Assembly: GCF_902713615.1 (NCBI RefSeq)
Contig: NC_052163.1
Span: forward strand, 37,334,248-37,398,247
From: Scyliorhinus canicula
Lineage: Eukaryota
Direction: 5' to 3'
Length of the DNA: 64,000 bases
The notes below the pieces were generated by a model. The model was not told where the DNA came from. It saw only the letters and a list, made by a program, of their open reading frames with translations, and did not search any database. A program made the position numbers and the translations under genes. Every line of letters starts with the position of its first letter. Positions within the stretch are counted from its first letter, which is position 1. This document shows positions 591 through 53,011 of the stretch, one piece after another.

Positions 591-893
591 CTTTAACCTT
601 CAGTGTGATGGTTTGAATTCTGTGACCCGAAGTTGTTTCCACGTCGTACTGGTATGTTCCACCATCTGACAATTGTGTTTTCTGGATTATCAGTGAGATA
701 TCCAGTGAATTTGGGTGAAGTAATTTAATTCGACCTTGAGCTCCTCTGAAATGTGTGCTGCCGTTCAAGATTGTACTTCCATTTTTAGATATACGCAGTT
801 CCATCAAGTGAAGTGTGTTGATTTTGCATGGCAGTTCTGTGTCTCTATCAAATAGTCCTGTCACTGAATGGCTGCAATTTAAAGTTAGGAACT
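591..893 (-). CDS. Gene 1 IgV exon, B7-family (PD-L1/PD-L2-like) protein; downstream exons lie outside the window
   Basis: Acceptor ttttcag|AG at 894/893 and donor AAAG|gtggat at 591/590; 303 nt, phase 1-1. Translation (Q)FLTLNCSHSVTG..TELPC..RIKLL..DISLIIQKTQLSDGGTY..TITLKVK fits a V-set pattern and aligns with genes 2 and 3. Confidence 0.88.
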
Positions 894-945
894 CTGAAAA
901 ACAAACATATTCATTTCCTCCCATTATTGCCTCAGTGACAATCGC

Positions 946-1674
946 TGTTAAATCAACCACATATTCAGAAATACTTGGTACTTACGTGTTGCCAGGTATG
1001 TGCGTGTGGATAGGATGACACAAAGGAAAGTCACTGTGTGATAGAAACCCATCCCTGAAGGTAGTTCACCTGGGAAAATACAGAACCATTAAGTCTCAGG
1101 AATCTAATGAAACCTGCTGTTTTCACTATCTTAGGCATCACGTTAGCTTTTGTTTTAGGAAACTCGAAGAGCAAGGTAGAGCCGCATTAATAATTCCATT
1201 AAGGCACATTTGCATTACTAAAAAAAAAATGAATGCTCGTAATTATTTAATGTGCTTCAGGGGTAAAACAAAAACGAAACAATCAGTTTTTTAATGTTTT
1301 CCTACAGTTCCCACAGCCAGAACAGCAGAATCCACAAACTGATAACAGTTTACAAATGGACGGTGCAGCAATGTCCAATCTCGACAGGCTGTGTGGAATT
1401 TTGCATCAGCAACGGATTTTTGCCAAAATCAGTTCCCCGCAACGATTGACAGCTTTGCCGTGCAGTCGGACCGGGTACATTCCTCTATAACTGCTGTCCT
1501 ATCCTGGGATCTGGGTGGTCCGATTCTGGATGTTGGTCCGATCTCAGTGTTGTGATATCCCATCCGAATGGCTATCAATCGTTGAGCAAGTGCTGGCACA
1601 GCATTTCAAATGGGGGGGGGGGGGGGGGGGGGGCGTAAGTACCAAGTATTTCTGAATATGTGGTTGATTTAACA
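946..1674. repeat. Perfect 41-bp inverted repeat (946-986 and 1634-1674)
   Basis: tgttaaatcaaccacatattcagaaatacttggtacttacg at 946-986 is the exact reverse complement of 1634-1674; the right copy follows a 22-nt G run. Confidence 0.95.
986..1052 (-). CDS. Gene 1 start/signal-peptide exon (MGFYHTVTFLCVILSTRTYLAT)
   Basis: cttcag|GGATG acceptor, 67 coding nt, C|gtaagt donor, then a 92-nt intron to the IgV exon in the correct phase; hydrophobic leader homologous to the gene 2 leader. Confidence 0.85.
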
Positions 1675-2335
1675 ATGTGTTCTTTCAGACGGTCGGAGAC
1701 TCGATGGGCTGAATGGCCTCCTTCTGCACCGTCGGCATTCCATGAACTTCCTAGTTTCTCAACCGCTGCGTCCACTTACAGCCTGTGTGATCAGCAATCA
1801 GAAAGGACACGTTTAAATATCCCAAATGTATTTTCTAGTTTACCTTTGAGTTTAACAGCCTTTGAATGTTTGCAGTGAGTTATGTCGGCTTCTTGAGTGT
1901 AAGGGTTGAAACTGGGGGCATGCCGGAGGGTGACGCTGTTCGGGAGTGTTCGCCAGTGTCCTGAGATTAACCGCACTTCACTTAATGCTGAGGTCACCAT
2001 TCATATCCCAAACAATGTACATTTAACTGGGGCACAAATCTGTGTCTGTTTCTGGTAGAAGCACTGGTTCAGATTCCGATCTAATTACTTCTAATGGAGT
2101 CGCAGAGAATAATAAACTGTGTTGAAGGACCCGGTCCATTTTATTTTTAACAGCCCACTTTCCGCTTTTCTAGAGAGCGAGGCAGTCAGATTCCTGGCTG
2201 TTATTGTGTTATTGTGTCTCAATGCGGGAATACAGCAACAATTACATTTTACGTTTCAAATTCGTTGCCTGCTTTAATTTCTGCTAAATCAATCCTTCCT
2301 CCACCTTTACCTAAATTTACCAATTGTATACTCAC

Positions 2336-2590
2336 GAGTTTTAGATAAGAGTCGATTAAACTTTTCCCAAGTTTTCTGCAAGTCAAGACTGCACCTTTGG
2401 TTCCAAGCAAAATGCGGAGTTCCAACCTGCCCAGCGGTTCAAACTGCCCCAAGTTAAATCGGCCAGCTTGACAATTGCTGTCGGTGATTGCAGGGGTCTG
2501 GGTCTGCACAGTGAGACCCGGAGCTGGGGTTTGCGGCGGAGCGAGTCACAGCCTCTGGGCTCTGCATCCAGTCTGGAATAGTTATCAACC
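2336..2590 (-). other. Probable non-coding exon 1 / proximal promoter of gene 1
   Basis: Donor AACTC|gtgagt at 2336/2335. The sequence is homologous to 32710-32885 upstream of gene 2 (shared ttcaaac..ccaag, gacccgga..gctggg..ggagcgagtca, tccagtctgg). The 5' end is a guess. Confidence 0.45.
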
Positions 2591-2716
2591 AACGCCTGTC
2601 AGTTTATGTTGATAACAGTGAACATTGATCTGCAACTCCTCGATCCTCCACTAGTCCTCTCTGCCTGCCAATGATCAGCCAATACACTGACTCCTCCGTT
2701 TTTCTTCCCTTCTTAC

Positions 2717-4717
2717 AGGAAATGTATCAAAGAAAAAGAGAGATCCTATAAAGTGGCCAAAAGCACTGGGAAATCAGAAGATTGGGAAGGCTACAAAAAC
2801 AAACAGAGGTTAACAAAGAGACACATAAGGAAGGAGAGGATCAAATATGAAGGCAGGCTAGCCAGTAATATAAGAAATGATAGTAAAAGTTTCTTTCAAT
2901 ACAGTAGAAACAAACGACAGGCCAAAGTAGACATTGGGCCAATTCAAACTGATTCTGGAGGGCTAGTGATGGGAGACGAGGAAATGGCTGGAGAACTTAA
3001 TAAGTACTTTGCGTCTGTCTTCACAGTGGAAGACATGAGTAATATCCCAAAAATTATAAAGGGTCAGGGGGCTGAGTTGAGTATGGTTGCCATTACAAAA
3101 GAGATGGTGCTAAAAAAGCTAAAAGGTCTTAAAATTGACAAATCTCCTGGCCCCGATGGGCTACATCCTAGAGTTCTGAGGGAGGTGACTGAAGAAATAG
3201 GGGAAGCGTTGGTTGAGATCTTTCAAAAATCACTGGAGTCAGGGAAAGTCCCGGACGATTGGAAGATCGCTGTTGTAACCCCCTTGTTCAAGAAAGGATC
3301 AAGACAAAAGATGGAAAATTATAGGCTAATTAGCCTAACATCGGTTGTTGGTAAAATTCTAGAATCGATCGTTAAGGATGAGATTTCTAAATTCTTGGAA
3401 GAGCAGGGTCGGATTAGAACAAGTCAACATGGATTTAGTAAGGGGAGGTCGTGCCTGACGAACCTGTTAGAATTCTTTGAGGAGGTGACAAGTAGGTTAG
3501 ACCAGGGAAACCCAGTGGATGTGGTCTATCTGGATTTCCAAAAGGCCTTTGATAAGGTGCCACACAGGAGGCTGCTGAGTAAGGTGAGGGCCCATGGTGT
3601 TAGAGGTGAGCTACTGGCATGGGTTGAGGATTGGCTGTCTGACAGAAGGCAGAGAGTTGGGATAAAAGGTTCTTTTTCGGAATGGCAGCCGGTGACCAGC
3701 GGTGTCCCACAGGGTTCAGTGTTGGGGCCGCAGCTGTTCACCATATATATTAATGATCTGGATGAAGGGACTGGGGGCATTCTAGCGAAGTTTGCCGATG
3801 ATACAAAGTTAGGTGGTCAGGCAGGTAGTGCTGAGGAAGTGGGGAGGCTGCAGAAGGATCTAGACAGTTTGGGAGAGTGGTGCAGGAAATGGCTGATGCA
3901 ATTCAACGTGAGAAAATGTGAGGTCTTGCACTTTGGAAAAAAGAATCCAAGCATAGACTACTTTCTAAACGGTGAGAAAATTCATAATGCCAAAGTACAA
4001 AGGGATCTGGGAGTGCTAGTCGAGGATTCCCTAAAGGTAAACATGCAGGTTGAATCCGTGATTAAGAAAGCGAATGCAATGTTGTCATTTATCTCAAGAG
4101 GGTTGGAATATAAAAGCAGCGATGTGCTACTGAGCCTTTATAAGGCTCTGGTTAGGCCCCATTTGGAGTACTGTGTCCAGTTTTGGGCCCCACATCTCAG
4201 GAAGGACACTCTGGCACTGGAGCGTGTCCAGCGGAGATTCACACGGATGATCCCTGGAATGGCGGGTCTAACATATGAGGAACGGCTGAGGATCCTGGGA
4301 TTGTATTCATTGGAGTTTAGAAGGTTAAGGGGAGATCTAATAGAAACTTACAAGATAATACATGGTTTAGAAAGGGTGGACGCAAAGAAACTGTTTCCGT
4401 TAGGCGAGGAGACGAGGACCCGTGGGCACAGCCTTAGAATTAGAGGGGGTAAATTCAGAACAGAAATGTGGAGACATTTCTTCAGCCAGAGAGTGGTGGG
4501 CCTGTGGAATTCATTGCCGCGGAGTGCAGTGGAGGCCGGGACGCTAAATGGCTTCAAGGCAGAGATAGATAAATTCTTGATGTCGCGAGGAATTAAGGGC
4601 TACGGGGAGAATGCTGGTAAGTGGAGTTGAAATGCCCATCAGCCATGATTGAATGGCGGAGTGGACTCGATGGGCCGAATGGCCTTACTTCCACTCCTAT
4701 GTCTTATGGTCTTATGG
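2717..4717 (+). mobile_element. 5'-truncated CR1-type LINE with uninterrupted RT-half ORF (2753-4630)
   Basis: KSPGPDG, GVPQGSVLGP, FADD and RPHLEYC motifs; (cttatggt)n tail; TCTTAC on both flanks (2711-2716, 4718-4723). Confidence 0.95.
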
Positions 4718-16438: not shown

Positions 16439-17906
16439 AAGGTATGTTGCCTCCCGGGTGCCAGGGCCAGGGATGTCTCGGATCGTGTCTTCAGGATTCT
16501 GAAGGGGGAGGGTGAGCAGCCAGAAGTTGGGTGCACATTGGTACTAACGATGTAGGTAGGAAAAGGGGTGTGGTGGTAATAAACAAGTTTAGGAGTTAGG
16601 CTGGAAGTTAAAGACCAGGACAGACAGAGTTGTCATCTCTGGTTTGTTGCCGGTGCCACGTGATAGCGAGGCTAGGAATGGGGAGAGAGTGCAGTTGAAC
16701 ACATGGCTGCAGGAATGGTGTAGCAGGGAGGGCTTCAGGTATTTGGATAATTGGAGCGCATTCTGGGGAAGGTGGGACCTGTACAAGCAGGACGGGTTGC
16801 ATCTGAACCGGAGGGGCACCAATATCCTGGGAGGGAGGTTTTCTAGTACTCTTCAGGAGGGTTTAAACTAATTTGACAGGGGAATGGGAACAGGATTTGT
16901 AGTCCAGCAACTAAGGAAGCTGATATTCAGGCCGCCAAAGCATGTAGTGACGCAGTGGGGAAGGTAACACTGACAAAGGAGAGTACTTGCAGGCAAGGAG
17001 ATGGGTTGAAGTGCGTATATTTCAACGCAAGAAGCATCAGGAATAAGGTGGGTGAACTTAAGGCATGGATCGGTACTTGGGACTACGATGTGGTGGCCAT
17101 CACGGAAACCTGGATGGAAGAGGGGCAGAAATGGTTGTTGGAGGTCCCTGGTTATAGATGTTTCAACAAAATTAGGGAGGATGGTAAAAGAGGTGGGGGG
17201 TGGCATTGTTAATTAGAGATAGTATAACAGCTGCAGAAAGGCAGTTCGAGGAGGATCTGCCGACTGAGGTAGTATGGGTTGAAGTCAGAAATAGGAAAGG
17301 AGCAGTCACCTTGTTGGGAGTTTTCTATAGGCCCTCTAATAGCAGCAGAGATGTTGAGGAACAGATTGGGAAACAGATTTTGGAAAGGTGCAGAAGTCAC
17401 AGGGTAGTAGTCATGGGTGACTTCAACTTCCCAAACATTGAGTGGAAACTCTTTAGATCAAATAGTTTGGATGGGGTAGTGTTTGTGCAGTGTGTCCAGA
17501 AAGCTTTTCTAACACAGTATGTAGATTGTCCGACCGGGGGGAGGCCATATTGGATTTAGTACTTGGTAATGAACCGGGGCAGGTGATAGATTTGTTAGTG
17601 GGGGAGCATTTTGGAGGTAGTGACCACAATTCTGTGACTTTCACTTTAGTAATGGAGAGAGATAGATGCGTGCAACAGGGTAAGGTTTACAATTGGGGGA
17701 AGGGTAAATACAATGCTGTCAGACAGGAATTGAATTGCATAAGTTGGGAACATAGGCTGTCAGGGAAGGATACAAGTGAAATGTGGAACTTGTTCAAGGA
17801 ACAGGTACTACGTGTCTTTGATATGTATGTCCCTGTCAGGCAGGGAAGAGATGGTCAAGTGAGGGAACCGTGATTGACAAGAGAGGTTGAATGTCTTGTT
17901 AAGAGG

Positions 17907-18963
17907 AATTGGCTAGCTGAAAGAAGACAGAGGGTGGTGGTTGATGGCAAATGTTCATCCTGGAGTTCAGTTACTAGTGGTGTACCGCAAGGATCTGTTT
18001 TGGGGCCACTGCTGTTTGTCATTTTTATAAATGACCTGGAAGAGGGTGTAGAAGGATGGGTTAGTAAATTTGCAGATGACACGAAGGTCGGTGGAGTTGT
18101 GGATAGTGCTGAAGGATGTTATAGGATACAGAGGGACATAGATAAGCTGCAGAGCTGGGCTGGGTGGTGGCAGATGGAGTTTAATGCGGAAATGTGTGAG
18201 GTGGTTCACTTTGGAAGGAGTAACAGGAATGCAGAGTACTGGGCTAATGGCAAGATTCTTGGTAGTGTAGATGAACAGAGAGATCTCGGCATCCAGGTAC
18301 ATAAATCCCTGAAAGTTGCCACCCAGGTTAATAGGGCTGTTAAGAAGGCATATGGTGTGCTAGCCTTTATAAGCAGGGGGATTGAGTTTCGGAACCACAA
18401 GGTCATGCTGCAGCTGTACATAACTCTGGTGCGGCCGCACCTGGAGTACTGCGTGCAGTTCTGGTCACCACATTATAGGAAGGATGTGGAAGCTTTGGAA
18501 AGGGTTCAGAGGAGATTTACTAGGATGTTGCCTGGTATGGAGGGAAGGTCTTACGAGGAAAGGCTCAGGGAATTGAGGTTGTTTTCGTTAGAGAGGAGAA
18601 GGCTGAGAGGTGACTTAATAGAGACATATAAGATAGCCAGAGGGTTAGATAGGGTGGACAGTGAGAGTCTTTTTCCTCGGATGGTGATGACCAACACGAG
18701 GGGACATAGCTTTAAATTGAGGGGTGATAGATATAGGACAGATGTCAGAGGCAGTTTCTTTACTCAGAGAGTAGTAGGGGTGTGGAACGTCCTGCCTGCA
18801 ATAGTAGTAGACTCGCCAACTTTAAGGGCATTTAAGTGGTCACTGGATAGACATATGGATGAAAATGGAATAGTGTAAGTCAGATAGGCTTCAGATGGTT
18901 TCACAGGTCGGCGCAACATCGAGGGCCGAAGGGCCCGTACTGCGCTGTAGTGTTCTATGTTCT
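17907..18963 (+). mobile_element. CR1 3' fragment C nested in CR1-A ORF2
   Basis: RT C-terminal half (NWLAERRQRV..FADD..) plus ttctatg tail; the host reading LVKR..KETYVRL resumes at 18964. Confidence 0.85.
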
Positions 18964-27448: not shown

Positions 27449-27465
27449 TCATGTGAGCTTGACAT
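27449..27465 (-). CDS. Gene 2 candidate terminal coding exon (D)VKLT-stop; 3'UTR possibly to about 26455
   Basis: Very strong acceptor t10ccttttaacag|AT; phase-1 reading gives DVKLT*, similar to VQLR* in gene 3; minus-strand AATAAA at 26476-26481. Confidence 0.5.
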
Positions 27466-28804
27466 CTGTTAAAAGGAAAAAAAAAATTATTAAACCAGTG
27501 AGACAGAAAGCTTCCAAAAATTAATTAGATGTTTGAAATCGCACCTACCATTGGCATTGCCGACTGTCTTCTAGCTGTTGAAAGTAAAACAAAAGAAAAA
27601 ATAATTAATTTATTTTTTCTTGTACGAAATAGTTCGTTATTTGTTGGGAGTTCCACAACTCCGAGTCATATATATGAAAAACAGCAATCTCTGTACAATT
27701 GTGATCATTTTTACAGTCATGAACAATGCTCACATTTTCCTTAATTAACTTTTAAACAACTTCTCCGACTTACTTGTCCAGTGCTAAAAAAAAATGATCT
27801 TACAAGAAATAATAACTGCAGTCACCTATCCGCCTTACAATTTTCCTTCTTCCAACTTGACTTAGTGATTATGTAGTGGTTATGTTAACAAACTATTAAT
27901 TCAAAAAGTTAGCCAATTCTAGTAATCCCAAGGACAGGTATTTAAATCCTAATATCACAGTGCAAAACCTTGAATTCAATTTTAAAAATAATGCTTGGTA
28001 TTGGTAAAAGGTGACCGTGAAGCTTCAGTCAATATTAGACCATGTCACAAAAACCCAAAGGGTTCACGAATCTCTTTTTTTCAAAGGAATCCTATAATTC
28101 TTACTGTGCCAACCTTATATGTGTCTCAAGTCCTACACAAATGTGCTTCATTCTTAACTAGCCTCTGAATTGGTCCAGCAGGTCAGTCAATTATATCAGG
28201 CTACAAAGAAGAATACTTTTAGGGCCTGTTCTGTGCTGTACTGTTCTATGTTCTATGTTCTAAATGTTGATCACACCTCGAGCATGATGGTTTTGAAGTT
28301 GACTTTCCTGCATGGTGAATGTTTCCTTACTTCCCCGACCTGATTGTTTTTTCCCCATATTAAACACTACAACTTGTGATTTGAAATACTGTCGATGACT
28401 CAGTCCTACACCTATCTCTTCCAATTCTGTTCAATGGTTGGCTCTGGCTCAATAGAAGGTGCTCCAGAACTATTCAGTCTGACTCATCTAAAGTTTTCTT
28501 ACATTCTCTAGCTAGAAGCTGGGTAGCAGCAGAAGATGGCTTATAATGGCACATTATCAGCCAATTTTACACCTAACTACTTCAACCAACTACGATGTAA
28601 GGAAATCTGAAGATTATAACCAATTAGGGAAAATTCAAAGCATTAACTTATTTTTATTAATTAAACAAATATTCGGCGAATGTGTTCATGCTCAGTAAGG
28701 TCACAGTACTGGACATCCAATGATTCAGCTGCGATGAATGTAGGAAATGGTTATATATATTGTATGATGTGTTGGTTGCAGTAAGGTTATTAAAATAACT
28801 TAGA

Positions 28805-29759: not shown

Positions 29760-29906
29760 CTGCACGTGCATTTCTCCTGAATCGAAGAATCGCTAAGATG
29801 ACTATTCCAATTGCAAGTGCGCCAACAATGATGAAGATAGCTGTGAGAACCTTAGTCTTTTTCTCTTCACTTTGGCGATCAGTATTAGGTTCGTCCAAGA
29901 AGGGAA
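29760..29906 (-). CDS. Gene 2 stalk/transmembrane exon
   Basis: tttcag|TT acceptor, G|gtgtgg donor, 147 nt, phase 1-1; VLTAIFIIVGALAIGIVILAIL followed by the basic RFRRNAR. Confidence 0.85.
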
Positions 29907-30309: not shown

Positions 30310-30606
30310 TTGGAAAATGCTTCTTAATCTCATATTTAGGCTCTTCCACGTTCCTCACAACACATGTGTAGTTGCCATCCAAAGCATTTTCTGCAACTGT
30401 GATTGGAAGTATACTGGTCATCTTGAACAGTCCCTGTTGGGTCTCTACGCTACTAGTTTTGGCGTGAGAGGTGAGGTCCGTTTTCTCATAGACAAACCAG
30501 TGAATCTCAGCGAGAGGATACCCAGTTGTTTCACAAATCAGGTCCGTTGTTCTCATTCTTCTGGTGATGTTTGATGCCAAACTCACTTTTGGCAAACTGT
30601 ACGGAG
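30310..30606 (-). CDS. Gene 2 IgC exon, PD-L1/PD-L2-like
   Basis: tttag|CT acceptor, A|gtaagt donor, 297 nt; APYSLP..LICETTGYPLAEIHW..QGLFKMTSIL..NYTCVVRN. Confidence 0.92.
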
Positions 30607-31731: not shown

Positions 31732-31798
31732 TTTGTGCAAAGGATGCACTTCTGCACAAGACAACATAAAGGAAAATTGTTGTACTGTGTAAACCCAT
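31732..31798 (-). CDS. Gene 2 start/signal-peptide exon (MGLHSTTIFLYVVLCRSASFAQ)
   Basis: ttccag|GAATG acceptor, 67 coding nt, A|gtaagt donor, 94-nt intron to the IgV exon. Confidence 0.87.
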
Positions 31799-35960: not shown

Positions 35961-38900
35961 TGATGTGTTGGGCAAGCTGGGTCTTTGTGAACTGTGTTTG
36001 ATGCAGTGTAGAGAGAGACAGGCATCCAACACGTGAAGAGATGCACCACGATTTTATTGAACAACTAACTATAATATATGTAATATATGCTTAACTGTGG
36101 GTTGACACTATGCTGACTTGACTGGAGACCTGAGGCTAACCTGACCAGACTATCTTACTACCACATGGTGTTTGTACTAGCTGCTGCTCACGAGCTCTGA
36201 CTGTCTCAGAGGCTGAATCCTAAGAGAGCGGGAAAACTAGTGCCCTCTGGCTTTATAGTGGCCATATCCTGTCTGGTGATTGGCTGCTGTGTTCTGTGTG
36301 CTCACTGGTCATCCTGTGTGTCAATCACTGCCTGTCTGCACTCCATCATATACCTGGATGTATATTATGACACCTCCCCCCCTTTAAAAAAAAAATGTGT
36401 TTAGGGCAATAAATAATGAATATGAGTACAGGAACTTGACTATATACAGAATATGCTAATTTATATATATGGGAAGGTGTCTAGTGCAGATAGAGGGCAA
36501 ATAACACATGAGAAAAAAACAATATGTACAGATGTCAAAACGATGAGATAACAAGGTAACGCAACTTTCAGTCTACAAATTCAGTCTCTGTGGCAGGTGA
36601 CAAATTCTGGCTGACCGCCTCAAGGGTGGGTCAGGGGCCGCCTGCACCTGAATGGGCGGAATTGCCTCCAATGCGGTGGTCGCAGAGGTTGGTAGAATAA
36701 CTGGCAGATCGGTGGTCTCGTGGAAGGGCCCGACCTGAGGAAGCAGTGTGCAAGGCGGGACATCACGGTCGGGTGGCGGGCGGCGGGCGTGGAAGTCTGC
36801 GCAGTGCCCGCCTGTTGTGCCGGAGAAAGGAGCCATCAGGCATGCGAACGAGGAACGATCTTGGGGCCACTTGTTTTACCACCACAGCCGTGGTGGACCA
36901 GCCACCGTCAGGCAGCTGAATACGAACTCAGTCAGCAAGGACCAGCTCGGGGAGATCTGTGACATGGGCATCGTATCCCGACTTGCATTGGGCCCGAGTC
37001 TGTTGCATCCTCTGTATGTTCGGGAAGTTGTCAAGGTCCGGAATGTGGATGGCTGGAACCGTCATTTGCAGTGTGTGGTTCATGAGGAGCTGCGCTGGGG
37101 GCAGCCCAGTGGACAGAGGGTTTGCTCTATAAGCCAAATCGGAACCCGAATCAGCAGCTTTGCACAATAGTCTTTTAACGATGTGGATCCCTTTTTCGGC
37201 CTTCCCGTTCGACTGGGGGTAGTGGGGGCTGGATGTGACATGCCGAAAGTTGTACAGCCGGGCAAAATCTGACCACTCCTGGCTGAAAAAACAGGGGCTG
37301 TTGTCACTTATCACTGTGAGTGGGATCCCATGTCGGGCAAAAGTCTCCTTGCATGCCTTGATTACCGCTGCCGACGTGAGGTCAGACAGTCTGACCACTT
37401 TGGGGTTGTTGGAAAAGTAGTCCACTGGGAGGACATAGTCACGCCCCTTGGCATGGAACAGGTCAACACCAACTTTGGACCATGGGGAGGTTACTATTTC
37501 ATGCTGCTGTAGAGTCTCTTTAGGCTGGGCCGGCTGGTATTTTTGACACGTCGGGCAATTGAGGACCGTGTTGGCGACATCTTGGCTGATGCCTGGCCAG
37601 TATACTGCCTCTCGGGCTCGACGGCGCCATTTTTTGACCTCCAGGTGACCCTCGTAGATTTGGCCGAGAACCAAATCTCGCATGCTCTGTGGGATCACAA
37701 TTCTGTCAAGCTTCATAAGGATGCCTTCTACCACCGTTATAGCGTCCTTGACATTATAAAACTGGGACACTGCCCCTTTTCCAAATCATTCGTGAGGTGC
37801 TGCATCACGCGCTGGAGCAGAAGATCCCTGGCCGTCTCCTCACGAATTTGCACGACCCTCTCATCAGAGGCCGGAAAGTTGGAGGCACAGAATTGCACCA
37901 GCGCATCTATTTGACTGACAAAGTCAGACTGCTCACACGGTGTGGTGATAGATCTGGAGAGTGCATCGGCAACAATGAGCTCTTTGCCCGGGGTGTACAC
38001 GAGGTCGGAATCGTAGCGACGTAGCTTGAGGAGGGTGCGTTGTAACCGTGGCATCATGTCATTGAGATCTTTTTGGATGATGTGAACCAATAGCCTGTGA
38101 TCCGTCTCAAACGTGAATTTGGGGAGGCCATACGCATAATCATGGAACTTGTCGATCCCTGTAAGGAGGCCCAGGCATTCTTTCTGTATCTGAGTGTATC
38201 GTTGCTCTCGAGCCATATGCAATTAGGGCCCAGCAGGAGGAGTCATCCCGTTGGAGGAGCACTGCCCCAATGTCAGCCTGGCTCGGGTTGGTGAATATTT
38301 TTGTTCCTTGGCGGGGTCGAAAAACACCAGCACCGGGGCCTTGGTGAGTTTCGTCCTTAACTCACGCCACTCTTGCTCATGCTCTGGCTAGCTCTGCTCG
38401 TTTAGGTATTGGGTAGTGTCCCTCATGATGTTACGGTTCAAATGTTTGGGGTCGCTACAGATTCGAAGTTCCCCTGATGGCTTCTTGAATCAAACCATGG
38501 AGCTAACCCAGTCCGTGGGTTCCGTGACCTTTGAATTGACGCCCTGGCCCTGGAGGTCTTGCAGCTGCTGCTTGAGGCGGTCCTTAAGGGGTGCCGGCAC
38601 CCGACACAGTGTGTGAACCATAGGGGTGGCATTCGGCTTCAGTAGGATTTTGTATCAGTATGGGAGTATGCCCATACCTTTGAACACGCTATGATGTCAT
38701 CGAGTTGAGCCTTGAAGTTATCAGCTGGTGAGGCTGTTGCCTGTGCGGACGATCATGGTGTGAACCCGCTGCACTAGGGTCAGGAGTTTGCAGACCTGAG
38801 CACTGAGCAGGGACGCTCTGTTGGGTCCTACAATTTCAAATCGCAGCATTGTTTTTAATGACCTATTGGACACCACAAGCTGGCATGAGCCACTGGCAGC

Positions 38901-40588
38901 AATGGCATTGCCATTGTAGTCGAGGAGCTGGCAGACCGGTGGAAGAATGCTTGGTCTGACGCGGATGGTGTCGAGGTCAGACTTTGAAATGAGGTTTGCT
39001 GAAGCGCCGGTGTCCAGCTTGAAACGTATGCGAGCCTTGTTAACCGTAAGGGCGGAACACCACTCGTCGTCTGGATCAATGCTCAGGATTGGGAGTTGTT
39101 TCACGATCGTTGAGAAAGGCAGCGTATGCTTAGTGATGATGCCCACCCGGAATGGGGATTTGAGGCCCTCAGCGTCGGGATCTAGTAGACTGTCAGGGTT
39201 GGAGTCTGTCACGGGCTGCTGTACTGATCGGACGTTCCTGCGCTGTGGCTGGGATCGCTGTGTGCTGGGCAGTGGAGCAGGTCTGCAAAGGTCTGCGTAG
39301 TGGTCAAGCTTGCCACCCTGGAGACAGCATCGAGATTTTGCCGGACATTGCTGCTTTAAATGGGCGGAGCCACAATTGATACACGTCATAACGCCGACGT
39401 CAGGATGTTCCGTGCACCACCGCGCATGCGCAGTGCGGTCGAACAACGTGCGCACTTGCGCGGGCTGGTCGTCGGTCTCGCCGTCCCCTCGGTTGTGGTG
39501 CACATGCGCTGGAGCCCGGGAAAAGCGTGTGAAATGGCCACTCTCATCAAGACTCAGGCCCTGCATTTGTTTAATGGCTTGCACCTGTTCTGCTTCATGG
39601 GGGTTTAGCCTTAGCATTTCTGCCACCCTGATGTGGGAGTACCGGTTGTTAGCGTGCTCGTGGAGGACGCAGATTTCAATAGCGATGGTAAGGGTGAGCT
39701 GCTTAACTTTCAGGAGCTGCTGGCGAAGGGAATCGGAGTGGACCCCCGAAAACGATCTGATCCCGGATCATGGAATCAGTTGTCGAGTCATAGTTGCATG
39801 ACTGCGCGAGGATGCGGAGATGCGTTAAAAAGGACTGAAAAGGTTCATCCTTACCCTGAAGCCTCTGCTGGAAAACGTACCGTTCAAAGCTCTCATTGAC
39901 GTCAATGTCACAGTGGCTGTCGAACTTCAGCAGGACTGTTTTAAAATTTGTCTTGTCTTCGCCTTCAGTAAATGTGAGGGAGTTGTAGATGTGGATAGCA
40001 TGGTCGACGGCTGTAGAATGGATGTGCGATCTTCCTGGCATTCGATGCAGCCTCTAGGTCGGTGGCTTCAAGATAGAACTGGAACTTCTGTTTGAAAATC
40101 TTCCAGTTTGCACCGAGGTTGCCGGCGATGCGGAGCTGCAGGGGAGGGCGGACGCTGTCCATGTTACCGGATGGCTGATCGCTGGTCAAGGCAGATTATC
40201 TCAAGGTAGGTCCGTCAAACTTCAGCATTACTCACTGGTACCGTGATGTGTTGGGTAAGCTGGGTCTATGTGGACTGCATTTGATGCAGTGTAGAGAGAG
40301 ACAGGCTTCCAACACTTGAAGAGATGCAACATGATTTTATTGAACAACTAACTATGATATATGCTTAACTGTGGGTTGACATTATGCTGACTTGACTGAA
40401 GACCTGAGGCTAACCTGACCAGACTAACTGACTACCACATGGTGTTTGTACGAGCTGCTGGTCACGAGCTCTGACTGTCTCAGAGGCTGGATCCCGAGAG
40501 AGCGGGAAAACTGGTGACTTCTGGCTTTATAGTGGTCGTGTCCTGTCTGGTGATTGGCTGCTGTGTTCTGTGTGCTCACTGGTCATCC
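35961..40588 (-). mobile_element. Ty3/Gypsy LTR retrotransposon with the RT core deleted
   Basis: LTRs at 35961-36372 (polypurine tract ggggggagg upstream) and 40244-40588 (outer end truncated); gag with a CCHC-like knuckle, protease FKLDTGAS, RT N-terminus jumping to RNase H near 38400, integrase (VGVDLF, SDNSPCF, PQSNG). Confidence 0.92.
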
Positions 40589-42500: not shown

Positions 42501-42529
42501 GCAGTTCCCAATTAGCTTACTAATCATCT

Positions 42530-46282: not shown

Positions 46283-46283
46283 T

Positions 46284-47182: not shown

Positions 47183-47376
47183 AGGGCAGGATTCTCTGGC
47201 TCGCCAGACGCGTGTTTCTCGGCCGCGCGCCGTTCGCTAGCGGCAGGATTCTATCTTCCCACCAATTGTCATAGGGATTCCCTATTGAAGCCACCCCACG
47301 CTGCTGCAAAACCCATTGGCAGAGATACGGTGCCGGCGGGTAAATTGAATCGCAACTACCGGAGAATCGCAGCCAT
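47183..47376. mobile_element. Short Harbinger-type MITE
   Basis: TIRs gggcaggattctc / ggagaatcgcagcc. Confidence 0.6.
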
Positions 47377-47657
47377 GATCTGTTAGTTGGCAGTGGAACA
47401 ATCCACAAAGTTTGAACCCCATATATGCGGTTGTCAAGATGTTGAATGACCTGACTATCATTTGGAAAATGAAAATATGGACAATTTAATGAATCAGTTC
47501 CCTGTAGAGCCCCATGAGCTCCAAAAGTCAGAACACTCGATGATCCGATTCGACGTTGAGTATAAATGAATGAAGATCCCATGACATGGTTTAAATTCAT
47601 TCAGCTGATCTCAACCAGAGTAGTTACTGGGGATGTTAAAATTACACTTAGTACCTT

Positions 47658-47671
47658 TCATCTAAGCTGGA
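47658..47671 (-). CDS. Gene 3 candidate terminal coding exon (V)QLR-stop
   Basis: ttttttattgatgtag|TC acceptor in phase 1; resembles VKLT* of gene 2. An alternative acceptor at 46921 would give ENTE*. Confidence 0.35.
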
Positions 47672-47779
47672 CTACATCAATAAAAAATGTATTTCCTGAC
47701 TGATATTCAATGACTTTGGTTGGAATAACCTTTCCATCATCAAGATTGACTATTTCAACCTACTTGTGTCATTGTTTCA

Positions 47780-48290
47780 GCCCATCTACTGCTCAAACTC
47801 TCATTTATGCCTTTGTTCATTCCAACCTCAAATATATCAATCCTCTCCCAGCTTTCACCCTCCATTAACGTGAATTGATCCAAAATTCTAGCGCCTATAA
47901 TCCGACTAGCATCACATCTTGTTCACTCGTCGCCCACCACACCCCTACCCCCTTGCTCGCTGACTGACATCAGCTCCCAGCCCTCAAAGGTATCTAATTC
48001 CTTTCCTATCCTCAGCTCTACCTATCCTTGTAACCTCTTCCATTCCTAAGGTCCTATGAGAACTTTGCATTCCACGGGTTATGAACTCTTGTGATCTCCA
48101 CCATAGGCGGCTAGGCTTTCGTCTGCCTTCGCCCAAGCTCAGGAATTATCTCCGAAAGCCTACCTCTTTATCCACCTCTTTCCTTTCGAACAACATATTG
48201 TCCACCTCTCTCCCCTCTCCAGAATAACATCAATTTTAATGCCCCCCTGAAGTGTTTTGGGATGTTTTACTCTGTTGAGGAGACAATGCA
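47780..48290 (+). mobile_element. L2-like LINE 3' remnant
   Basis: Degenerate TLIYAFV and pyrimidine-rich 3' region typical of L2 ORF2 ends. Confidence 0.45.
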
Positions 48291-49032
48291 AATTGTTTTG
48301 GTGCTGAGGAAAAGTGATAGTACTTTCTCATGGGGAGAAAGCTGGACTAAACTCAGCTATGACCATCCTATTTTCATATGGGCTGACCATAATGTTCAGA
48401 CATATGGGTAAGGAGTGATCACGTTGACAGGTATAGAGCGTGGTGCAATTTTACACAAGAGGAAGATTTTAACAGGTGGTGGGGTTTGCTGTCCCCCACC
48501 TGAAGAGTTAGTAGGAATGCATCATTACTGATGCCGGCTGCCCCTCAGTCTTTTACCCAGTGTTAATTGGCTTGAGGTGTGGTACCACCCGACTCTCAGG
48601 TGGAAGTCTTGGGTCAGAGAGTTGTTGGCCAGTCTAATTGCAGGTGACGCCGTAGGCAGTCCCTTAAGCTAAGCCTTGAAGCCAGGATACAGGTAAGTAT
48701 TGGGGTTATTAGGCCAGAACAGAAAGGGAGGTCCTTGGAGGATTGGGAGGATTTGTTGGTGAGGAAAGGGGGGGGGAGGGGAGAGAAGGTGGACCTTGGG
48801 TGGGGAGAGCCCAATGATAAACGTGGATCGGAGAGACCAACCGGGTAATGTCGCGGTACCCAGCTTTCTACCTTCAGGGGGCAGTTAGATTCTCCTCCAT
48901 GAGTCAGAGTGGTTGGGAGGGGGTGGTGGGGGAGGGGGACTTAATGCAGCATTGGAGAAGGGAAACAAAATCTTGGAAAGGTCTTCAGCAAAAACAGTCC
49001 TGCCTTTGCCTTTATCAGAACTAATATTGTAC

Positions 49033-49185
49033 CTCGAGGGATTTGATGGCTCCAGTCAAAGAGCAACGTAATTGCCAGAAGAGTAAAAATGATCATGATG
49101 AAGCCCAGAGATAAATAAACACCAGGAGTTCTTCTTTTTTGTTTTGATAACTGAACATTCTTTTCAGTTTTAGAACAGTCCAATT
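49033..49185 (-). CDS. Gene 3 stalk/transmembrane exon
   Basis: tttcag|AA acceptor, G|gtacaa donor (weak), 153 nt, phase 1-1; hydrophobic GVYLSLGFIMIIFTLLAITLLF. Confidence 0.7.
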
Positions 49186-50886
49186 CTGAAATGACAAAGA
49201 CATAATTGCCATGTTTAATTACAGTTTATATCATGTACTCCTCAAGCTTTAATTAAAACATCTTTTATGGAAAACAGAATGGAGCAGATTATATTAATTC
49301 ATGAGATCACATGGTCATGGGTGAAGTGAATCAGGTAGTAGCGACAGCTACTTCTGCACAAGAAATTCCTTTGGAAGATTAGCCCTTGCTCTTGGCCACA
49401 TTATCAGTGGCACTCAATGAAAATGACTTATTCATATTCATTTAGGATTCGGGAATCAGGAAAAATTTGACAATGTGTCAACTGCAGAACAAGTGGAGTC
49501 GAGGGCTTGCTGGCTGGTGTACAATGAGCAGCAGAAACGATGTAACAATTTAAATAAGATCTCAGATTTTACGAAGTGCTTGTAATCTAAAACATTCAAT
49601 ACTACCCATATCTTAATACAAAATGGAAACAAAAATGCATATTGTGCACAAGTATGTTCCTAGGGGTTTACCCTCCAGCCATTAACTTCCATTCAGAGCA
49701 GCCTTGCTTGTCCACAAAAGGCCGGACCGGGCCTGCCATTTTCCTGGCATTACTGCGGAGTTTCTCATCTTTGTAAGGCTCAGTGCTGGACTTCACATTC
49801 TCCGGCATCCAGCGAGACAGCTTGCCATCTGGAATGACTGAGAAATTCATGACTGTGACCTTGATACATCAGCCCTTGCAACAGCTTCAGAACTACCAAG
49901 AAACACCTCTGAGGGTTGCTAACATCAAAACAAAACTACACCTTTCCTTAGCCTAACAGATGACGGTAGAATTTTCGGATGAGCGTTTTCACTAAAATAT
50001 CAATATTATTAATAATAAAATGGTGTTCCTTTTTAGGGCAGTATTAAAGTTTGAAGCAATATTGGGCCTAACTGCAAGGAAATGTAAGTCAGTTTGAGTT
50101 TTGTGGAGCCAATGGAAATTTAATTTGGGTGCATGGCAAAGAATTACATTCTGGGATTGCATTTGGCTTTATTCACAGAATCTCCTCTGAGGGGATTTTT
50201 GAGTTATTTAGGGAGAGTGTTGTTTGAATTTTGTATTGCTCATGGTGAAAGTTGCTGGGGTTTGGGAATACTTTCTCCAGACAGTATCAAAGTGGGAAGT
50301 CCCAGGTTAAATACCAAAGAGTTTTGTTCCAAACAATATGCTTTCAGTTCTATCTCAAATAAATGCCTTAACTTAAAACTCAGGAGTTCATTCCTTACAG
50401 TACTGGCTTGTTTCCATTTTCCCAGTTGCAGCTAATCTTATATCTAACTTAAAAAATACAGCAAACACTAATTTAAAGAGATAAGTAGATATTGTGACAT
50501 TTCTGACCTGCTTCCAATCAACAGCAAAACAAATAACTTTAATTTATCTTAACATTAGCATTTTCTTAATTTAGATTAGCCATGAAATTTCCTCAAGATG
50601 TAGCTGTCTGCCTCAAAGGGAAAAATAATGTTAAAGAAAGCTCCACTTTATGTGTTAAATGGAATAATGCTTTTGTCCTTATCTAACGCCGCCATCTGGC
50701 ATGGCTGAGAAATTCACGGGTTGCAATCACTGTCACTTTTCAGGATCAGAGATCAAAAACTCACTTTAGCTTTTCCCTTCAGGCTTCATTCAGATTAACA
50801 GCCTATCACGTTAGCCCATTTGGATAAATATGTTTTGCACTATACCCATAAATTTTATTGTATGTGAGCTCAAGGGCCAGCGTCAC

Positions 50887-50928
50887 TTGCAGAAATATTT
50901 CCCTCAGTCCTGATGTTTCTTCCTGCAT
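50887..50928 (-). CDS. Gene 3 candidate 42-nt stalk mini-exon (N)AGRNIRTEGNISA
   Basis: Strong polypyrimidine tract ttttttccccccgtacttttcgttgtgcagtacag; symmetric phase 1-1 with donor A|gtgacg; contains an N-glycosylation sequon (NIS). Confidence 0.45.
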
Positions 50929-51003
50929 CTGTACTGCACAACGAAAAGTACGGGGGGAAAAAAACCTTACATTTCAAGCTGAAGTAAATAAATCAAAACT
51001 CAC

Positions 51004-51258
51004 TTGCAGATTTGCATGCATTTTCAATGCATACAGAGCAAATATAGTTTATGGAACACAATTCGCCAACGACTGAAAGGTGAGTGGTGAGGTTGTACAA
51101 TTTATCTTCTCTTCGTAAACTGCTGTAATTAGCAGTCAAATTGATTCCATTTTCAATCTGCCACTGAAGTTTTGCCAAGGGATATCCAAGTGTAGTACAA
51201 GAAAGTCCTTTTTCATCACCTCGGTCACTTTTGGTCACTTGCGGCACAGTATATGGAG
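51004..51258 (-). CDS. Gene 3 IgC exon, PD-L1/PD-L2-like
   Basis: ttttcag|CT acceptor, A|gtgagt donor, 255 nt; APYTVP..LSCTTLGYPLAKLQW..RREDKLYNLTTHL..NYICSV. Confidence 0.9.
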
Positions 51259-51694
51259 CTGAAAAGCATGTTTTTCAAGTTTAATGTTGCAACTCAGTGA
51301 TGTAGAGCTGGATTAAATAAGATCAACACCAATCTTTCCAGTAGCATCACAAACACTCGTTTCCCAATATTTCAATACAGACCTCATTGGCCCACGCTCA
51401 CTGCATCATCCACGTCAGAAGCCTCATTATTTGCCCAAATAAACAGAAGGGGCAGAGTAAAATGCTGATTTTAGATGACTAACTTCAGTGTCAATTTCCC
51501 TTCCCTAATAAAAACAGTGACTACTGTTGAGGCATGATGATATGTGTGCCAACACATCTCGAGCACCTAAGCCAAGGTAAAGTTTTTATTCATGAATCAT
51601 GAAAAGAAGTGATGACATGATCGTCAATAACTGGGACCTTAAAACCAAGTTAATCACAAGCACACCTAATGTCTACTCATGCATACTTTCAGAA

Positions 51695-52038
51695 GGGCAG
51701 CACGGTGGCACAGTGGTTAGCTCTGATGCCTCATAGCACCAGGGTCCCAGGTTCAATTCTGGCCTTGGGTTATTGCTTGTGTGGAGTTTGTATTTTCACC
51801 CCGTGTCTGCGTTGGTTTCCTCCAGATGCTCCGGTTTCCTCCCACTGTCCAAAGTAGTGCAGGTTAGGTGGATTGGCCATGCTAAATTGCCCTTATTGTC
51901 CAAAAGGTTAGGTGGGTTACTGGGTTACGGGGATAGGGTGGAGGTGTAAGCTTAAATAGGGTGCTCTTTCCAAGGGCTGATGCAGACTTGATGGGCCGAA
52001 TGTCCTCCTTCTGCACTGTAAATTCTATGATTCTATGA
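51695..52038 (+). mobile_element. tRNA-derived SINE in gene 3 IgV-IgC intron
   Basis: gggcagcacggtggcacagtggttagc head; ttctatg tail. Confidence 0.85.
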
Positions 52039-52310
52039 AGGGACCATTTGACAAACGTTAGGAACAGGAACTCTGGCTGAAAATACACATCCAACTCTGG
52101 AAGTGCATGATTATCAATGATAAATAATCACAAAGGATTTGACCTGCCTTAGGATTGTGAGAGTGTACTTACAAAGAAAAGACCAATATTATAAATAGCT
52201 TCTTTACTGATGTAATTATATTAGTTTTCATCTTCAATGTCAGATCTGAAACATTGTAATCTCGTGTACTGTTCTGTTGACAAAGAAGAGAAGAGATTTT
52301 CTTTACCTAC

Positions 52311-52634
52311 CTTCAACCAAAAGGTTTATTTTCGCTTTTTTATAGCCACCTCGTCCACAGTCTAGCAAAATATGATATTTGCCTTCATCCGAAATTTCTG
52401 TTTCCTCAATTATCAATAAGGTAGTGTTTAAATCTGTAGAACATCGTCTTTGTTTCCAAGCATTAGCTTTTTTCTCTGTACATAGGTTTTCTATCTGGTT
52501 AGAATGCACTGCCTGGTAGGACCAGTTGCTATGACATTTTTGCCCTGGTTGTGATTCGTACTCACAAACCAAAACAGTGCGGTGATTATGTATTCCTGTG
52601 ACTGAACTCTCACACTGCATTGTTGTAAATGGTT
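52311..52634 (-). CDS. Gene 3 IgV exon (Cys-rich)
   Basis: ttttttcag|AA acceptor, GAAG|gtaggt donor, 324 nt; TMQCESSVTG..TVLVC..NW..LLIIEETEISDEGKY..KINLLVE. Confidence 0.88.
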
Positions 52635-52715
52635 CTGAAAAAAATGTGATGACCTTTTAGCATTTACACATAGAAATACAGAATATAGCGGAAATGATAT
52701 ACCAGTAATACTTAC

Positions 52716-52788
52716 TATTGGCTTCAATGGCCAGGGAGAAGAAAATCACAATCAAACCAAGAATTTTTGGAAAATGATAAGTCGCCAT
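52716..52788 (-). CDS. Gene 3 start/signal-peptide exon (MATYHFPKILGLIVIFFSLAIEAN)
   Basis: Acceptor ttttaaacag| at 52813/52812, ATG at 52788, A|gtaagt donor, 81-nt intron to the IgV exon. Confidence 0.87.
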
Positions 52789-53011
52789 CCTTTTTTCAGG
52801 GCTTTTAAGAACCTGTTTAAAATATTGGAATAATACACATATTATTACAAGTGAATAATCAGTTTTGGAGATAATTGTTTTTATACTCTGATATATCTTT
52901 CAGTTTGCCACGAAAAGACAACTTATGGAGGTGCCCAAACTCTGATTTCTTACAAACACGATGAGAGGCTTTATTAAGAGGAGTTGCTCATACAATCTAA
53001 GATGGAGAACT

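What the first reader, a model, noticed from the sequence alone, without database searches (positions are those of the whole stretch)
591..52812. Tandem cluster of at least three divergent PD-L1/PD-L2-like B7 genes
Seen: three same-strand genes with matching exon layout (untranslated exon, 67-73-nt leader, 81-94-nt intron, IgV, then IgC and TM where visible, all phase 1). Established: C-x3-GYP-x-A-x3-W is the spacing in human PD-L1 (CQAEGYPKAEVIW) and PD-L2 (CQATGYPLAEVSW), whereas B7-H3, ICOSL and CD80 have one extra residue there. Gene 2 reads CETTGYPLAEIHW and gene 3 CTTLGYPLAKLQW. Inference: this is a lineage-specific expansion of a PD-ligand-like subfamily in a probable cartilaginous fish, and the array may extend beyond the window.
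Basis: partly seen in the sequence, partly recalled or inferred. Interest (0 to 1): 0.75.

Follow-up and report, generated by a model that had tools for sequence, protein, structure and literature searches.

The report
Catshark cluster of unusual B7 genes
Three neighbouring immune-ligand genes of the B7 family in the small-spotted catshark are real and at least one is expressed, but they are not PD-L1/PD-L2 relatives: they belong to a barely studied B7 branch, found here only in fishes, whose first domain has an unusual cysteine pattern and evolves fast.

Summary
The window is Scyliorhinus canicula chromosome piece C18. Three minus-strand genes have the stated layout: leader exons of 67, 67 and 73 nt, introns of 92, 94 and 81 nt, then IgV, IgC and TM exons, all phase 1. 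Gene 2 equals the RefSeq protein named "CD276 antigen". Contigs of four public runs confirm the gene 3 splice junctions.

The PD-ligand reading fails.
- The true PD-L gene lies on C8 between PLGRKT and RIC1. The true CD276 lies on C24.
- A maximum-likelihood tree puts the cluster with the teleost "zgc:174863"-like proteins and two coelacanth proteins, against PD-L plus CD276 (support 100/99).
- AU tests reject a clade with PD-L (p=0.009) and with CD276 (p=0.008).
- The C-x3-GYP spacing recurs in two separate branches, so it is not diagnostic.

This branch shares an extra A-strand cysteine (C-x15-C). The elasmobranch members lack the canonical F-strand cysteine.

The V domains evolve fast, and the gene 3 V exon is polymorphic, almost wholly by amino-acid changes.

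The array continues slightly beyond both window ends. Readers of the adjacent, overlapping window had already noted the odd V domains.

Not tested: tetrapod CD80/CD86/ICOSLG are not in the tree, the C18 flanking synteny is unknown, and the receptor is unknown.

The parts
986..1052 (-). Gene 1 leader (signal peptide) coding part, 67 nt, ends in phase 1
   Evidence: tblastn of shark orthologues P0004 and P0165
591..893 (-). Gene 1 IgV exon. It has Cys in strands A and B, and Tyr in place of the F-strand Cys. The gene's IgC and TM exons lie below the window start.
31732..31798 (-). Gene 2 leader coding part, 67 nt
   Evidence: identical to RefSeq P0156
31311..31637 (-). Gene 2 IgV exon (C-x15-C, YxY)
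30310..30606 (-). Gene 2 IgC exon (CETTGYPLAEIHWF)
29760..29906 (-). Gene 2 stalk and transmembrane exon
27549..27574 (-). Gene 2 cytoplasmic exon (26 nt)
   Evidence: completes P0156
27436..27465 (-). Gene 2 last coding exon with stop codon
   Evidence: completes P0156 (297 aa)
52716..52812 (-). Gene 3 exon 2: 24 nt of 5' UTR plus the 73-nt leader coding part. Exon 1 ends at 64974, outside the window.
52311..52634 (-). Gene 3 IgV exon. It is divergent, has extra cysteines and Ile at the F-strand Cys position, and is polymorphic between runs.
51004..51258 (-). Gene 3 IgC exon (CTTLGYPLAKLQW)
49033..49185 (-). Gene 3 stalk and transmembrane exon, found from RNA-type contigs

Best explanation
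The window holds most of a four-locus tandem array on S. canicula C18: gene 0 (leader and V exon only), gene 1, gene 2 and gene 3.

The array encodes type I membrane glycoproteins of the B7 family, built as signal peptide, IgV, IgC, transmembrane helix and short tail.

They belong to a distinct B7 branch. It also contains the multi-copy teleost 'zgc:174863'-like genes and two coelacanth genes. It is separate from PD-L1/PD-L2 and from CD276.

The branch is marked by an extra cysteine in strand A of the V domain, 15 residues before the strand B cysteine. In all elasmobranch members the canonical strand F cysteine is replaced by Tyr (Ile in gene 3). The core disulfide is therefore probably moved to the A-B pair; this is an inference.

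Most likely mechanism (inferred): the proteins sit on antigen-presenting or myeloid cells and present the V-domain face to a still unidentified IgSF receptor on lymphocytes, probably of the CD28 family, delivering a co-stimulatory or co-inhibitory signal.

The V domain evolves fast and the gene 3 V exon is polymorphic. This points to a ligand-receptor or host-pathogen arms race at that face.

Shown here: gene structure, expression and splicing of gene 3, identity of gene 2 with a RefSeq model, phylogenetic placement, location away from the CD274 and CD276 loci, and the B7 fold.

Inferred only: the disulfide, cell type, receptor and sign of the signal.
For: Gene models and RNA:
-.

Family spread:
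- The family is found in sharks, rays, skates and sawfish, with two or three copies per species.
- A stingray member has a same-strand V+Ig neighbour within 8 kb.

Profile scores:
- An HMM of the shark family scores coelacanth 114 bits, teleost zgc:174863-like 75-112, gene 3 91.5, PD-L 60-84 and CD276 61-71.

Tree and AU tests:
- ML tree of 57 V-C units under LG+C20+F+G4. The split {shark family, gene 3, teleost group, two coelacanth genes} against {PD-L, CD276, C16 type} has support 100/99. The shark family is monophyletic at 99/97. Gene 3 is its sister at 91/78.
- AU tests reject union with PD-L (p=0.0087) and with CD276 (p=0.0076).

Cysteine pattern:
- The A-strand Cys is present in nearly all members of the branch and absent from PD-L and CD276.
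- The F-strand Cys is replaced by Tyr in 20 of 20 elasmobranch members and in otophysan teleosts, and by Trp in the coelacanth protein.

Loci:
- PD-L sits between PLGRKT and RIC1 on C8, and the CD276 orthologue is on C24.

Fold:
- AF2 model pLDDT 87. Foldseek TM 0.75-0.85 to CD276, B7-H6, PD-L1 and butyrophilins.

Evolutionary rate:
- Gene 2 against its S. torazame orthologue: V 78.9% identity, C 90.9%. PD-L of the same species pair: V 99.2%, C 92.9%.
- The gene 3 V exon has 11 variant sites among four runs, 10 of them nonsynonymous. There are none in the C and TM exons. Fisher p=0.0002 for clustering in V.

Expression lead:
- Zebrafish zgc:174863 is enriched in microglia/macrophages and has no assigned mammalian orthologue (PMC7720500).
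Against: - The tree lacks tetrapod CD80, CD86, ICOSLG, VTCN1, HHLA2, butyrophilins and the published cyprinid/salmonid CD80/86. The branch could therefore turn out to be the fish side of one of those families.
- The tree is unrooted.
- Gene 3 sits on a long branch (1.65), and its place beside the shark family has only 91/78 support.
- By plain best hit, the closest solved structure is CD276: 64 bits against 43 for PD-L1 with gene 2, and 97 against 91 with the branch profile.
- The A-B disulfide is not shown; the tool returns no model coordinates.
- Flanking synteny on C18 is unknown.
- No tissue or cell-type data for the shark genes were obtained.
- The 10:1 nonsynonymous ratio alone is not significant (binomial p=0.20).
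Confidence: 0.75

Rival explanations
1. One reading: the cluster is a lineage-specific expansion of a PD-L1/PD-L2-like subfamily, and its products would bind shark PD-1.
For: - The IgC B-strand motif C-x3-GYPLA-x3-W matches catshark, chimaera and tetrapod PD-L.
- The gene 3 IgC hits mouse PD-L2 best per domain, 25 bits against 15.5 for CD276.
- In the own genome the best IgC hit outside the cluster is the C8 PD-L gene: 39.9 bits for gene 2 and 34.7 bits for gene 3.
- NCBI names several orthologues PD-L1- or PD-L2-like.
Against: - The conserved PD-L locus (PLGRKT, PD-L, RIC1) is on C8, not C18.
- PD-L is single-copy and 63-86% conserved from chimaera to sharks, unlike this family.
- The tree places the cluster elsewhere with 100/99 support, and the AU test gives p=0.0087.
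- The V domain lacks the B-F disulfide that every PD-L has.
- The x3 spacing is absent from the cluster's nearest relatives.
Confidence: 0.04
2. The RefSeq view: the genes are CD276 (B7-H3) paralogues that duplicated from CD276 within cartilaginous fish.
For: - CD276 is the best solved-structure hit for the whole gene 2 protein (64 bits, 25% identity) and for the branch profile (97 bits).
- CD276 is the top Foldseek hit.
- RefSeq names gene 2 'CD276 antigen'.
Against: - The true CD276 orthologue is on C24 and groups with sturgeon and mammalian CD276 at 100/98.
- The AU test rejects a clade of cluster plus CD276 (p=0.0076).
- Unrelated catshark B7-like genes (the C16 ORF and the C7 exon) also hit CD276 best. 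This best hit reflects the slow evolution of CD276, not kinship.
- Bony-fish relatives exist, so the branch is older than cartilaginous fish.
Confidence: 0.08
3. The cluster is the elasmobranch counterpart of CD80/CD86 (or ICOSLG), that is, the ligands of the shark CD28/CTLA4/ICOS-type receptors.
For: - Some teleost members of the same branch are auto-named CD80.
- The flounder cDNA published as CD80/86 starts MASSSTIR, like percomorph members of this branch, and its product is on MHCII+, CD40+, CD83+ cells (PMC9127221). This is a weak link.
- The tree could not include tetrapod CD80/CD86.
Against: - The branch profile scores human CD80 at 69 bits, below CD276 (97), PD-L1 (91), BTN1A1 (77) and PD-L2 (75). 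ICOSL is not among the best 60.
- CD80 and CD86 are not among the 30 best Swiss-Prot fold matches.
- POPDC-family genes are on C6 and C7, none on C18.
- A separate B7-type IgC exon at C7:41.71 Mb, on the chromosome piece that carries the lone POPDC hit (taken as POPDC2), hits ICOSL (35 bits) and CD80 (32 bits). The gene 2 IgC does not.
- The grass carp CD80/86 primers (MNLTLL...) do not match the cyprinid zgc:174863 protein (PMC9245511).
- The tilapia zgc:174863 cluster does not list the published CD80/86 accession.
Confidence: 0.1

Closest known systems
Teleost 'zgc:174863'-like B7 proteins and coelacanth LOC102347274 / XP_005998595
   Same: - Same V-C-TM build.
- Same A-strand cysteine with C-x15-C spacing.
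- IHWF motif after GYP in the IgC domain.
- Tyr (or Trp) instead of the F-strand Cys in otophysan fishes and the coelacanth.
- Multi-copy.
- Joined in the tree by a 100/99 split and by the highest profile scores.
   Different: - Most percomorph members keep the F-strand Cys.
- C-x4-GYP instead of C-x3-GYP.
- Some members have a second IgC domain.
- Only 23-30% identical to gene 2.
- Essentially uncharacterised; zebrafish expression in microglia/macrophages is the only lead (PMC7720500).
- Shared synteny was not tested.
CD276 (B7-H3)
   Same: - Best sequence and fold match among solved structures.
- APYS-P linker between the V and C domains.
- QGLF..S.L and Y.C.VRN motifs in IgC.
   Different: - Separate orthologue on C24.
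- Canonical B-F disulfide and no A-strand Cys.
- Very slowly evolving.
- Tree and AU test separate them.
PD-L1 / PD-L2 (CD274 / PDCD1LG2)
   Same: - C-x3-GYPLA-x3-W in the IgC domain.
- Same exon plan with phase 1 introns.
   Different: - Different chromosome.
- Not between PLGRKT and RIC1.
- Different V-domain cysteines.
- V domain evolving more than 20 times faster between two Scyliorhinus species.
- Tree and AU test separate them.
CD80/CD86 and published teleost CD80/86
   Same: V-C-TM ligand. Some relatives are auto-named CD80.
   Different: - Low profile score to CD80.
- Another catshark gene on C7 is the better CD80/ICOSL-like candidate.
- Could not be placed in the tree.

Membership tests
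B7 family (broad sense) | One exon per domain: leader, IgV, IgC, TM, with phase 1 junctions | tested here: met
B7 family (broad sense) | V-set domain followed by a C-type Ig domain, with a fold like solved B7 ectodomains | tested here: met
   Pfam V-set and Ig_3/I-set. AF2 pLDDT 87. TM 0.75-0.85 to CD276, B7-H6 and PD-L1.
PD-L1/PD-L2 | Location in the conserved PLGRKT - PD-L - RIC1 block | tested here: not met
   That block is on C8:19.6-21.2 Mb with its own PD-L gene. The cluster is on C18.
PD-L1/PD-L2 | Groups with PD-L sequences in a tree | tested here: not met
   AU p=0.0087.
PD-L1/PD-L2 | IgC motif C-x3-GYP-x-A-x3-W | tested here: met
   Present, but not diagnostic: the nearest relatives have x4.
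PD-L1/PD-L2 | Binds PD-1 | not testable with these tools
   No binding assay and no complex prediction was run.
CD276 (B7-H3) | Orthologous position and clade with CD276 | tested here: not met
   The orthologue is on C24. AU p=0.0076.
zgc:174863-like fish B7 branch | A-strand Cys 15 residues before the B-strand Cys | tested here: met
   Genes 0-3 and all 20 elasmobranch sequences.
zgc:174863-like fish B7 branch | Clade with the teleost and coelacanth members | tested here: met
   Split 100/99. Profile scores 75-114 bits against 60-84 for PD-L and CD276. The reference set is incomplete.
zgc:174863-like fish B7 branch | Shared flanking genes | not tested
   Only transposon ORFs within 40 kb either side. 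No informative neighbours within 10 kb in tilapia or Pseudorasbora.
CD80/CD86 | Sequence grouping with CD80/CD86 | tested here: inconclusive
   Profile score to CD80 is 69 bits, below four other B7 types. No CD80/CD86 sequences were available for the tree.
CD80/CD86 | Linkage to POPDC2-region genes | tested here: not met
   POPDC genes are on C6 and C7. A CD80/ICOSL-like IgC exon lies at C7:41.71 Mb.

The most novel reading that the evidence does not exclude
These genes represent an ancient, undescribed B7 lineage. It is present in cartilaginous fish, ray-finned fish and the coelacanth, and was lost in tetrapods. In this lineage the core disulfide of the V domain has moved from strands B-F to strands A-B. 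Its fast-evolving, polymorphic V face engages one of the fish-only CD28-family receptors described in 2024 (CD28HL1-3, CD28X; PMC11599192) or the orphan PD-1-like shark receptor noted elsewhere in this scan.
Probability: 0.25. Interest if true: 0.7.

Novelty: new variant of a known kind. Interest (0 to 1): 0.55.

Why it matters
Public annotation calls these genes CD276, PD-L1-like or PD-L2-like, varying from species to species. Comparative studies of immune checkpoints that rely on those names would therefore miscount PD ligands and B7-H3 copies in sharks and rays.

Recognising a separate B7 branch, found here only in fishes, gives candidate ligands for the recently described fish-only CD28-family receptors.

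It also offers a natural example of an Ig V domain that does without the canonical disulfide.

The polymorphic V exon of gene 3 suggests a B7-type ligand under diversifying pressure. That can be tested with population data.

Tried and rejected
- **Flanking synteny of C18.** ORFs of 130 aa or more within 40 kb on either side are all transposon-like or low complexity. Look-ups around the tilapia and Pseudorasbora relatives gave no informative neighbours. The coelacanth look-ups found nothing.
- **Literature.** I found no paper on this branch in sharks. Quiniou et al. 2024 on catfish ligands and Flajnik et al. 2012 are not held.
- **ESM Atlas.** It returned only generic IgSF clusters.
- **Further paralogues.** Own-genome searches with gene 2 and gene 3 exons found no further family members elsewhere.
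- **RNA evidence.** Only gene 3 could be laid against runs (one call allowed). The runs are contigs guessed to be RNA, so levels, tissues and strand are not shown.
- **Complex prediction.** None was run, because no specific receptor is claimed.
- **Pfam.** They failed on frame errors of mine and were repeated correctly.
Full report
**What is there**

The window is G000:C18:37334248-37398247 of a 4.22-Gb genome. That genome is Scyliorhinus canicula: RefSeq proteins of this species lie on contigs of exactly the lengths of C18 and C8.

Six-frame reading and inspection of splice sites give three genes on the minus strand.

| Gene | Leader CDS | Leader-to-V intron | IgV | IgC | TM |
|---|---|---|---|---|---|
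| 1 | 1052-986 (67 nt) | 92 nt | 893-591 | outside window | outside window |
| 2 | 31798-31732 (67 nt) | 94 nt | 31637-31311 | 30606-30310 | 29906-29760 |
| 3 | 52788-52716 (73 nt) | 81 nt | 52634-52311 | 51258-51004 | 49185-49033 |

All junctions are AG/GT and phase 1.

The spliced gene 2 product is identical to the first 279 residues of RefSeq protein P0156, named 'CD276 antigen [Scyliorhinus canicula]'. Two small exons at 27574-27549 and 27465-27436 supply the last 18 residues.

**RNA support**

Contigs of four public runs from four studies were laid on 47400-53350.
- They carry the joints 52634>52716, 51258>52311 and 49185>51004, each with GT..AG on the minus strand. These are exactly the predicted gene 3 junctions.
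- They add a 153-nt exon (49185-49033) that encodes the stalk and a hydrophobic helix.
- Two contigs continue upstream of 52812-52815 into sequence that lies at 64977 onward, 974 nt beyond the window end, with a GT donor after 64974. Gene 3 therefore has an untranslated first exon and a 12-kb first intron.

The runs are only guessed to be RNA and are kept as contigs. The spliced form is shown, but not the level, tissue or strand.

**Extent of the array**

Own-genome searches with the gene 2 exons find three further pieces:
- the gene 1 IgC exon just below the window (window -1673..-1963);
- a weak gene 1 TM hit below that;
- a fourth copy (gene 0, window about -12104..-11620) with only a leader and a V exon.

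Gene 0 is 89% identical in DNA to the 5' part of gene 2. The invariant Gly of DxGxY is replaced by Trp, and no C or TM exon follows within 28 kb. It is most likely a partial duplicate.

Searches with the gene 3 exons find no further gene 3-like copy anywhere. The array is thus four loci in about 77 kb, counting exon 1 of gene 3.

**Not at the PD-L or CD276 loci**

- The gene 2 IgC exon also hits C8:20.91 Mb and C24:14.62 Mb.
- The C8 gene reads as a classical PD-L, with a V domain like PD-L1 and CQSMGYPLAEVVW in the C domain. It is RefSeq P0114.
- RIC1 (PF07064) is at C8:21.21 Mb and PLGRKT (PF10166) at C8:19.58 Mb. This is the order seen at human 9p24.1 (established knowledge).
- The C24 gene is a clear CD276 orthologue.
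- PD-L is single-copy and 63-86% identical from chimaera to sharks.

**What the cluster is related to**

A HMMER scan of 1.84 billion representatives with the gene 2 IgC exon finds full-length relatives in sharks, a skate, a stingray and a sawfish. It then finds teleost and coelacanth proteins, and only after those PD-L and CD276.

NCBI names for the elasmobranch proteins switch among CD276, PD-L1-like, PD-L2-like and uncharacterised.

The teleost group (100 hits with a profile) is named zgc:174863, CD276 homolog, butyrophilin, CD80, PD-L1 or VTCN1, with no consistency.

An HMM of the shark family's V-C unit gives these scores:

| Target | Bits |
|---|---|
| Coelacanth LOC102347274 | 114 |
| Teleost group | 75-112 |
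| Gene 3 | 91.5 |
| PD-L | 60-84 |
| CD276 | 61-71 |

An ML tree of 57 V-C units (213 columns, LG+C20+F+G4) has a 100/99 split. One side holds the shark family, gene 3, the teleost group and two coelacanth genes. The other side holds PD-L, CD276 and the C16 type.
- The shark family is monophyletic (99/97), with batoids sister to sharks.
- Gene 1 groups with Carcharodon and Cetorhinus copies (100/100).
- Gene 2 groups with S. torazame, Mustelus and a second Carcharodon copy (96/97).
- The gene 1/gene 2 duplication therefore predates the lamniform-carcharhiniform split and postdates the shark-ray split.
- Gene 3 is sister to the whole shark family (91/78) on a long branch.
- AU tests reject a clade of cluster plus PD-L (p=0.0087) and of cluster plus CD276 (p=0.0076).

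**Diagnostic residues**

- Every member of the branch but one has a Cys in strand A, 15 residues before the strand B Cys. PD-L and CD276 have none.
- The strand F Cys is Tyr in all 20 elasmobranch sequences and in catfish, characin and cyprinid members. It is Trp in the coelacanth protein and Ile in gene 3. It is kept in clupeiform and percomorph members.
- The IgC spacing C-x3-GYP is found in the shark family and PD-L. The spacing is x4 in the teleost, coelacanth and CD276 sequences.
- The motif IHWF after GYP is shared by the shark, teleost and coelacanth members.

**Why CD276 comes up as best hit**

Gene 2 scores 64 bits to the 2-Ig CD276 chains, against 43 for PD-L1 and 38.5 for PD-L2.

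The branch profile gives CD276 97, PD-L1 91, BTN1A1 77, PD-L2 75 and CD80 69 bits.

Unrelated catshark B7-like sequences also hit CD276 best: the intronless C16 ORF and an IgC exon on C7. This fits CD276 being the slowest-evolving family member rather than the parent of the cluster.

The AF2 model (pLDDT 87) matches CD276, B7-H6, butyrophilins, nectins, PD-L1/2 and CD200 about equally. It is a B7/butyrophilin-type ectodomain and the fold says no more than that.

**CD80/86 rival**

Some relatives are auto-named CD80, and I could not add true CD80/CD86 to the tree. Four points speak against this rival.
- The profile score to CD80 is low, and ICOSL is absent from the best 60.
- POPDC genes are on C6 and C7.
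- A B7-type IgC exon at C7:41.71 Mb hits ICOSL (35 bits) and CD80 (32 bits). The gene 2 IgC does not.
- The grass carp CD80/86 primers encode MNLTLL, unlike the cyprinid zgc:174863 protein (PMC9245511).

The flounder 'CD80/86' cDNA starts MASSSTIR, like percomorph members of this branch (PMC9127221). The fish CD80/86 literature may therefore mix two families. This is a weak observation.

**Rate and polymorphism**

Between S. canicula and S. torazame, the gene 2 V domain is 78.9% identical and its C domain 90.9%. The PD-L V domain is 99.2% identical.

In the laid contigs the gene 3 V exon differs from the reference at 8-10 sites in three runs and at 1 site in the partly covered fourth. At least four haplotypes are seen.
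- 10 of the 11 sites change the amino acid.
- The C and TM exons show no difference.
- Clustering in the V exon has Fisher p=0.0002. The 10:1 ratio alone has p=0.20.

**Mechanism**

Shown: these are membrane B7-type V-C proteins. Inferred: the V-domain core bond lies between strands A and B.

Also inferred:
- The proteins are ligands on antigen-presenting or myeloid cells. Zebrafish zgc:174863 is enriched in microglia/macrophages (PMC7720500).
- The receptor is an IgSF protein, probably of the CD28 family. Fish have several extra members of that family without known ligands (PMC11599192).
- The fast V domain reflects co-evolution with that receptor or with a pathogen.

**Earlier notes of this scan**

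Readers of the adjacent window, which overlaps positions 1-893 here, had noted the C-x15-C / YxY V domains. I confirm that and extend it to bony fishes. They also noted a GG-stop read-through after the V exon. I see it in genes 0 and 1 but not in gene 2, which reads on for 25 codons.

**Verdict**

The PD-ligand interpretation is refuted for orthology. The best reading is a tandem array of a distinct B7 branch, found here only in fishes, with a non-canonical and fast-evolving V domain. The genes are already in RefSeq under misleading names.

Noticed in passing
window 52311-52634: The gene 3 V exon is polymorphic among four public runs. There are 11 variant sites, 10 of them amino-acid changing, and at least four haplotypes. 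The C and TM exons are invariant.
   Followed up: partly
outside window, C18:37322146-37322560 (window about -12104..-11620; L011): A fourth copy has only a leader and a V exon. It is 89% identical in DNA to the 5' part of gene 2. The invariant Gly of DxGxY is replaced by Trp. It is probably a partial-duplicate pseudogene.
   Followed up: partly
L018:3843-5291 (C16:131348178-131349626): An intronless 483-aa ORF encodes V-C-V-C B7-like domains. It has a coelacanth homologue (P0185). This is unusual, because B7 genes normally have one exon per domain.
   Followed up: partly
L050:1423-1749 (C7:41709892-41710218): A B7-type IgC exon has best non-CD276 hits to ICOS ligand and CD80. It lies on the same chromosome piece as the lone POPDC hit taken to be POPDC2 (C7:46.19 Mb). 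It is a candidate shark CD80/86/ICOSL gene.
   Followed up: partly
window 591 and outside-window gene 0 V exon end; window 31311: Read-through of the V-exon donor gives Gly-Gly-stop in genes 0 and 1. In gene 2 it gives a 25-codon extension instead.
   Followed up: no
P0015, P0019, P0016 C-termini; window 27436-27465: Several family members end in T-D-V or T-Q-V, a class I PDZ-ligand-like tail. Gene 2 ends in D-A-D-I.
   Followed up: no
Hypanus sabinus contig around P0152: The stingray member has a same-strand V+Ig gene within 8 kb, so the tandem arrangement also exists in batoids.
   Followed up: no
window 2675-4627, 17874-18875, 36931-39767 and many others: The intergenic space is filled with reverse-transcriptase and integrase ORFs of LINE and LTR elements. 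A SINE-like repeat in the gene 3 V-C intron (51700-52100) is very abundant in the run contigs.
   Followed up: no
literature: PMC9127221 versus PMC9245511: The flounder 'CD80/86' starts like percomorph zgc:174863-like proteins. Grass carp CD80/86 does not match the cyprinid zgc:174863 protein. The fish CD80/86 literature may cover two different B7 families.
   Followed up: partly
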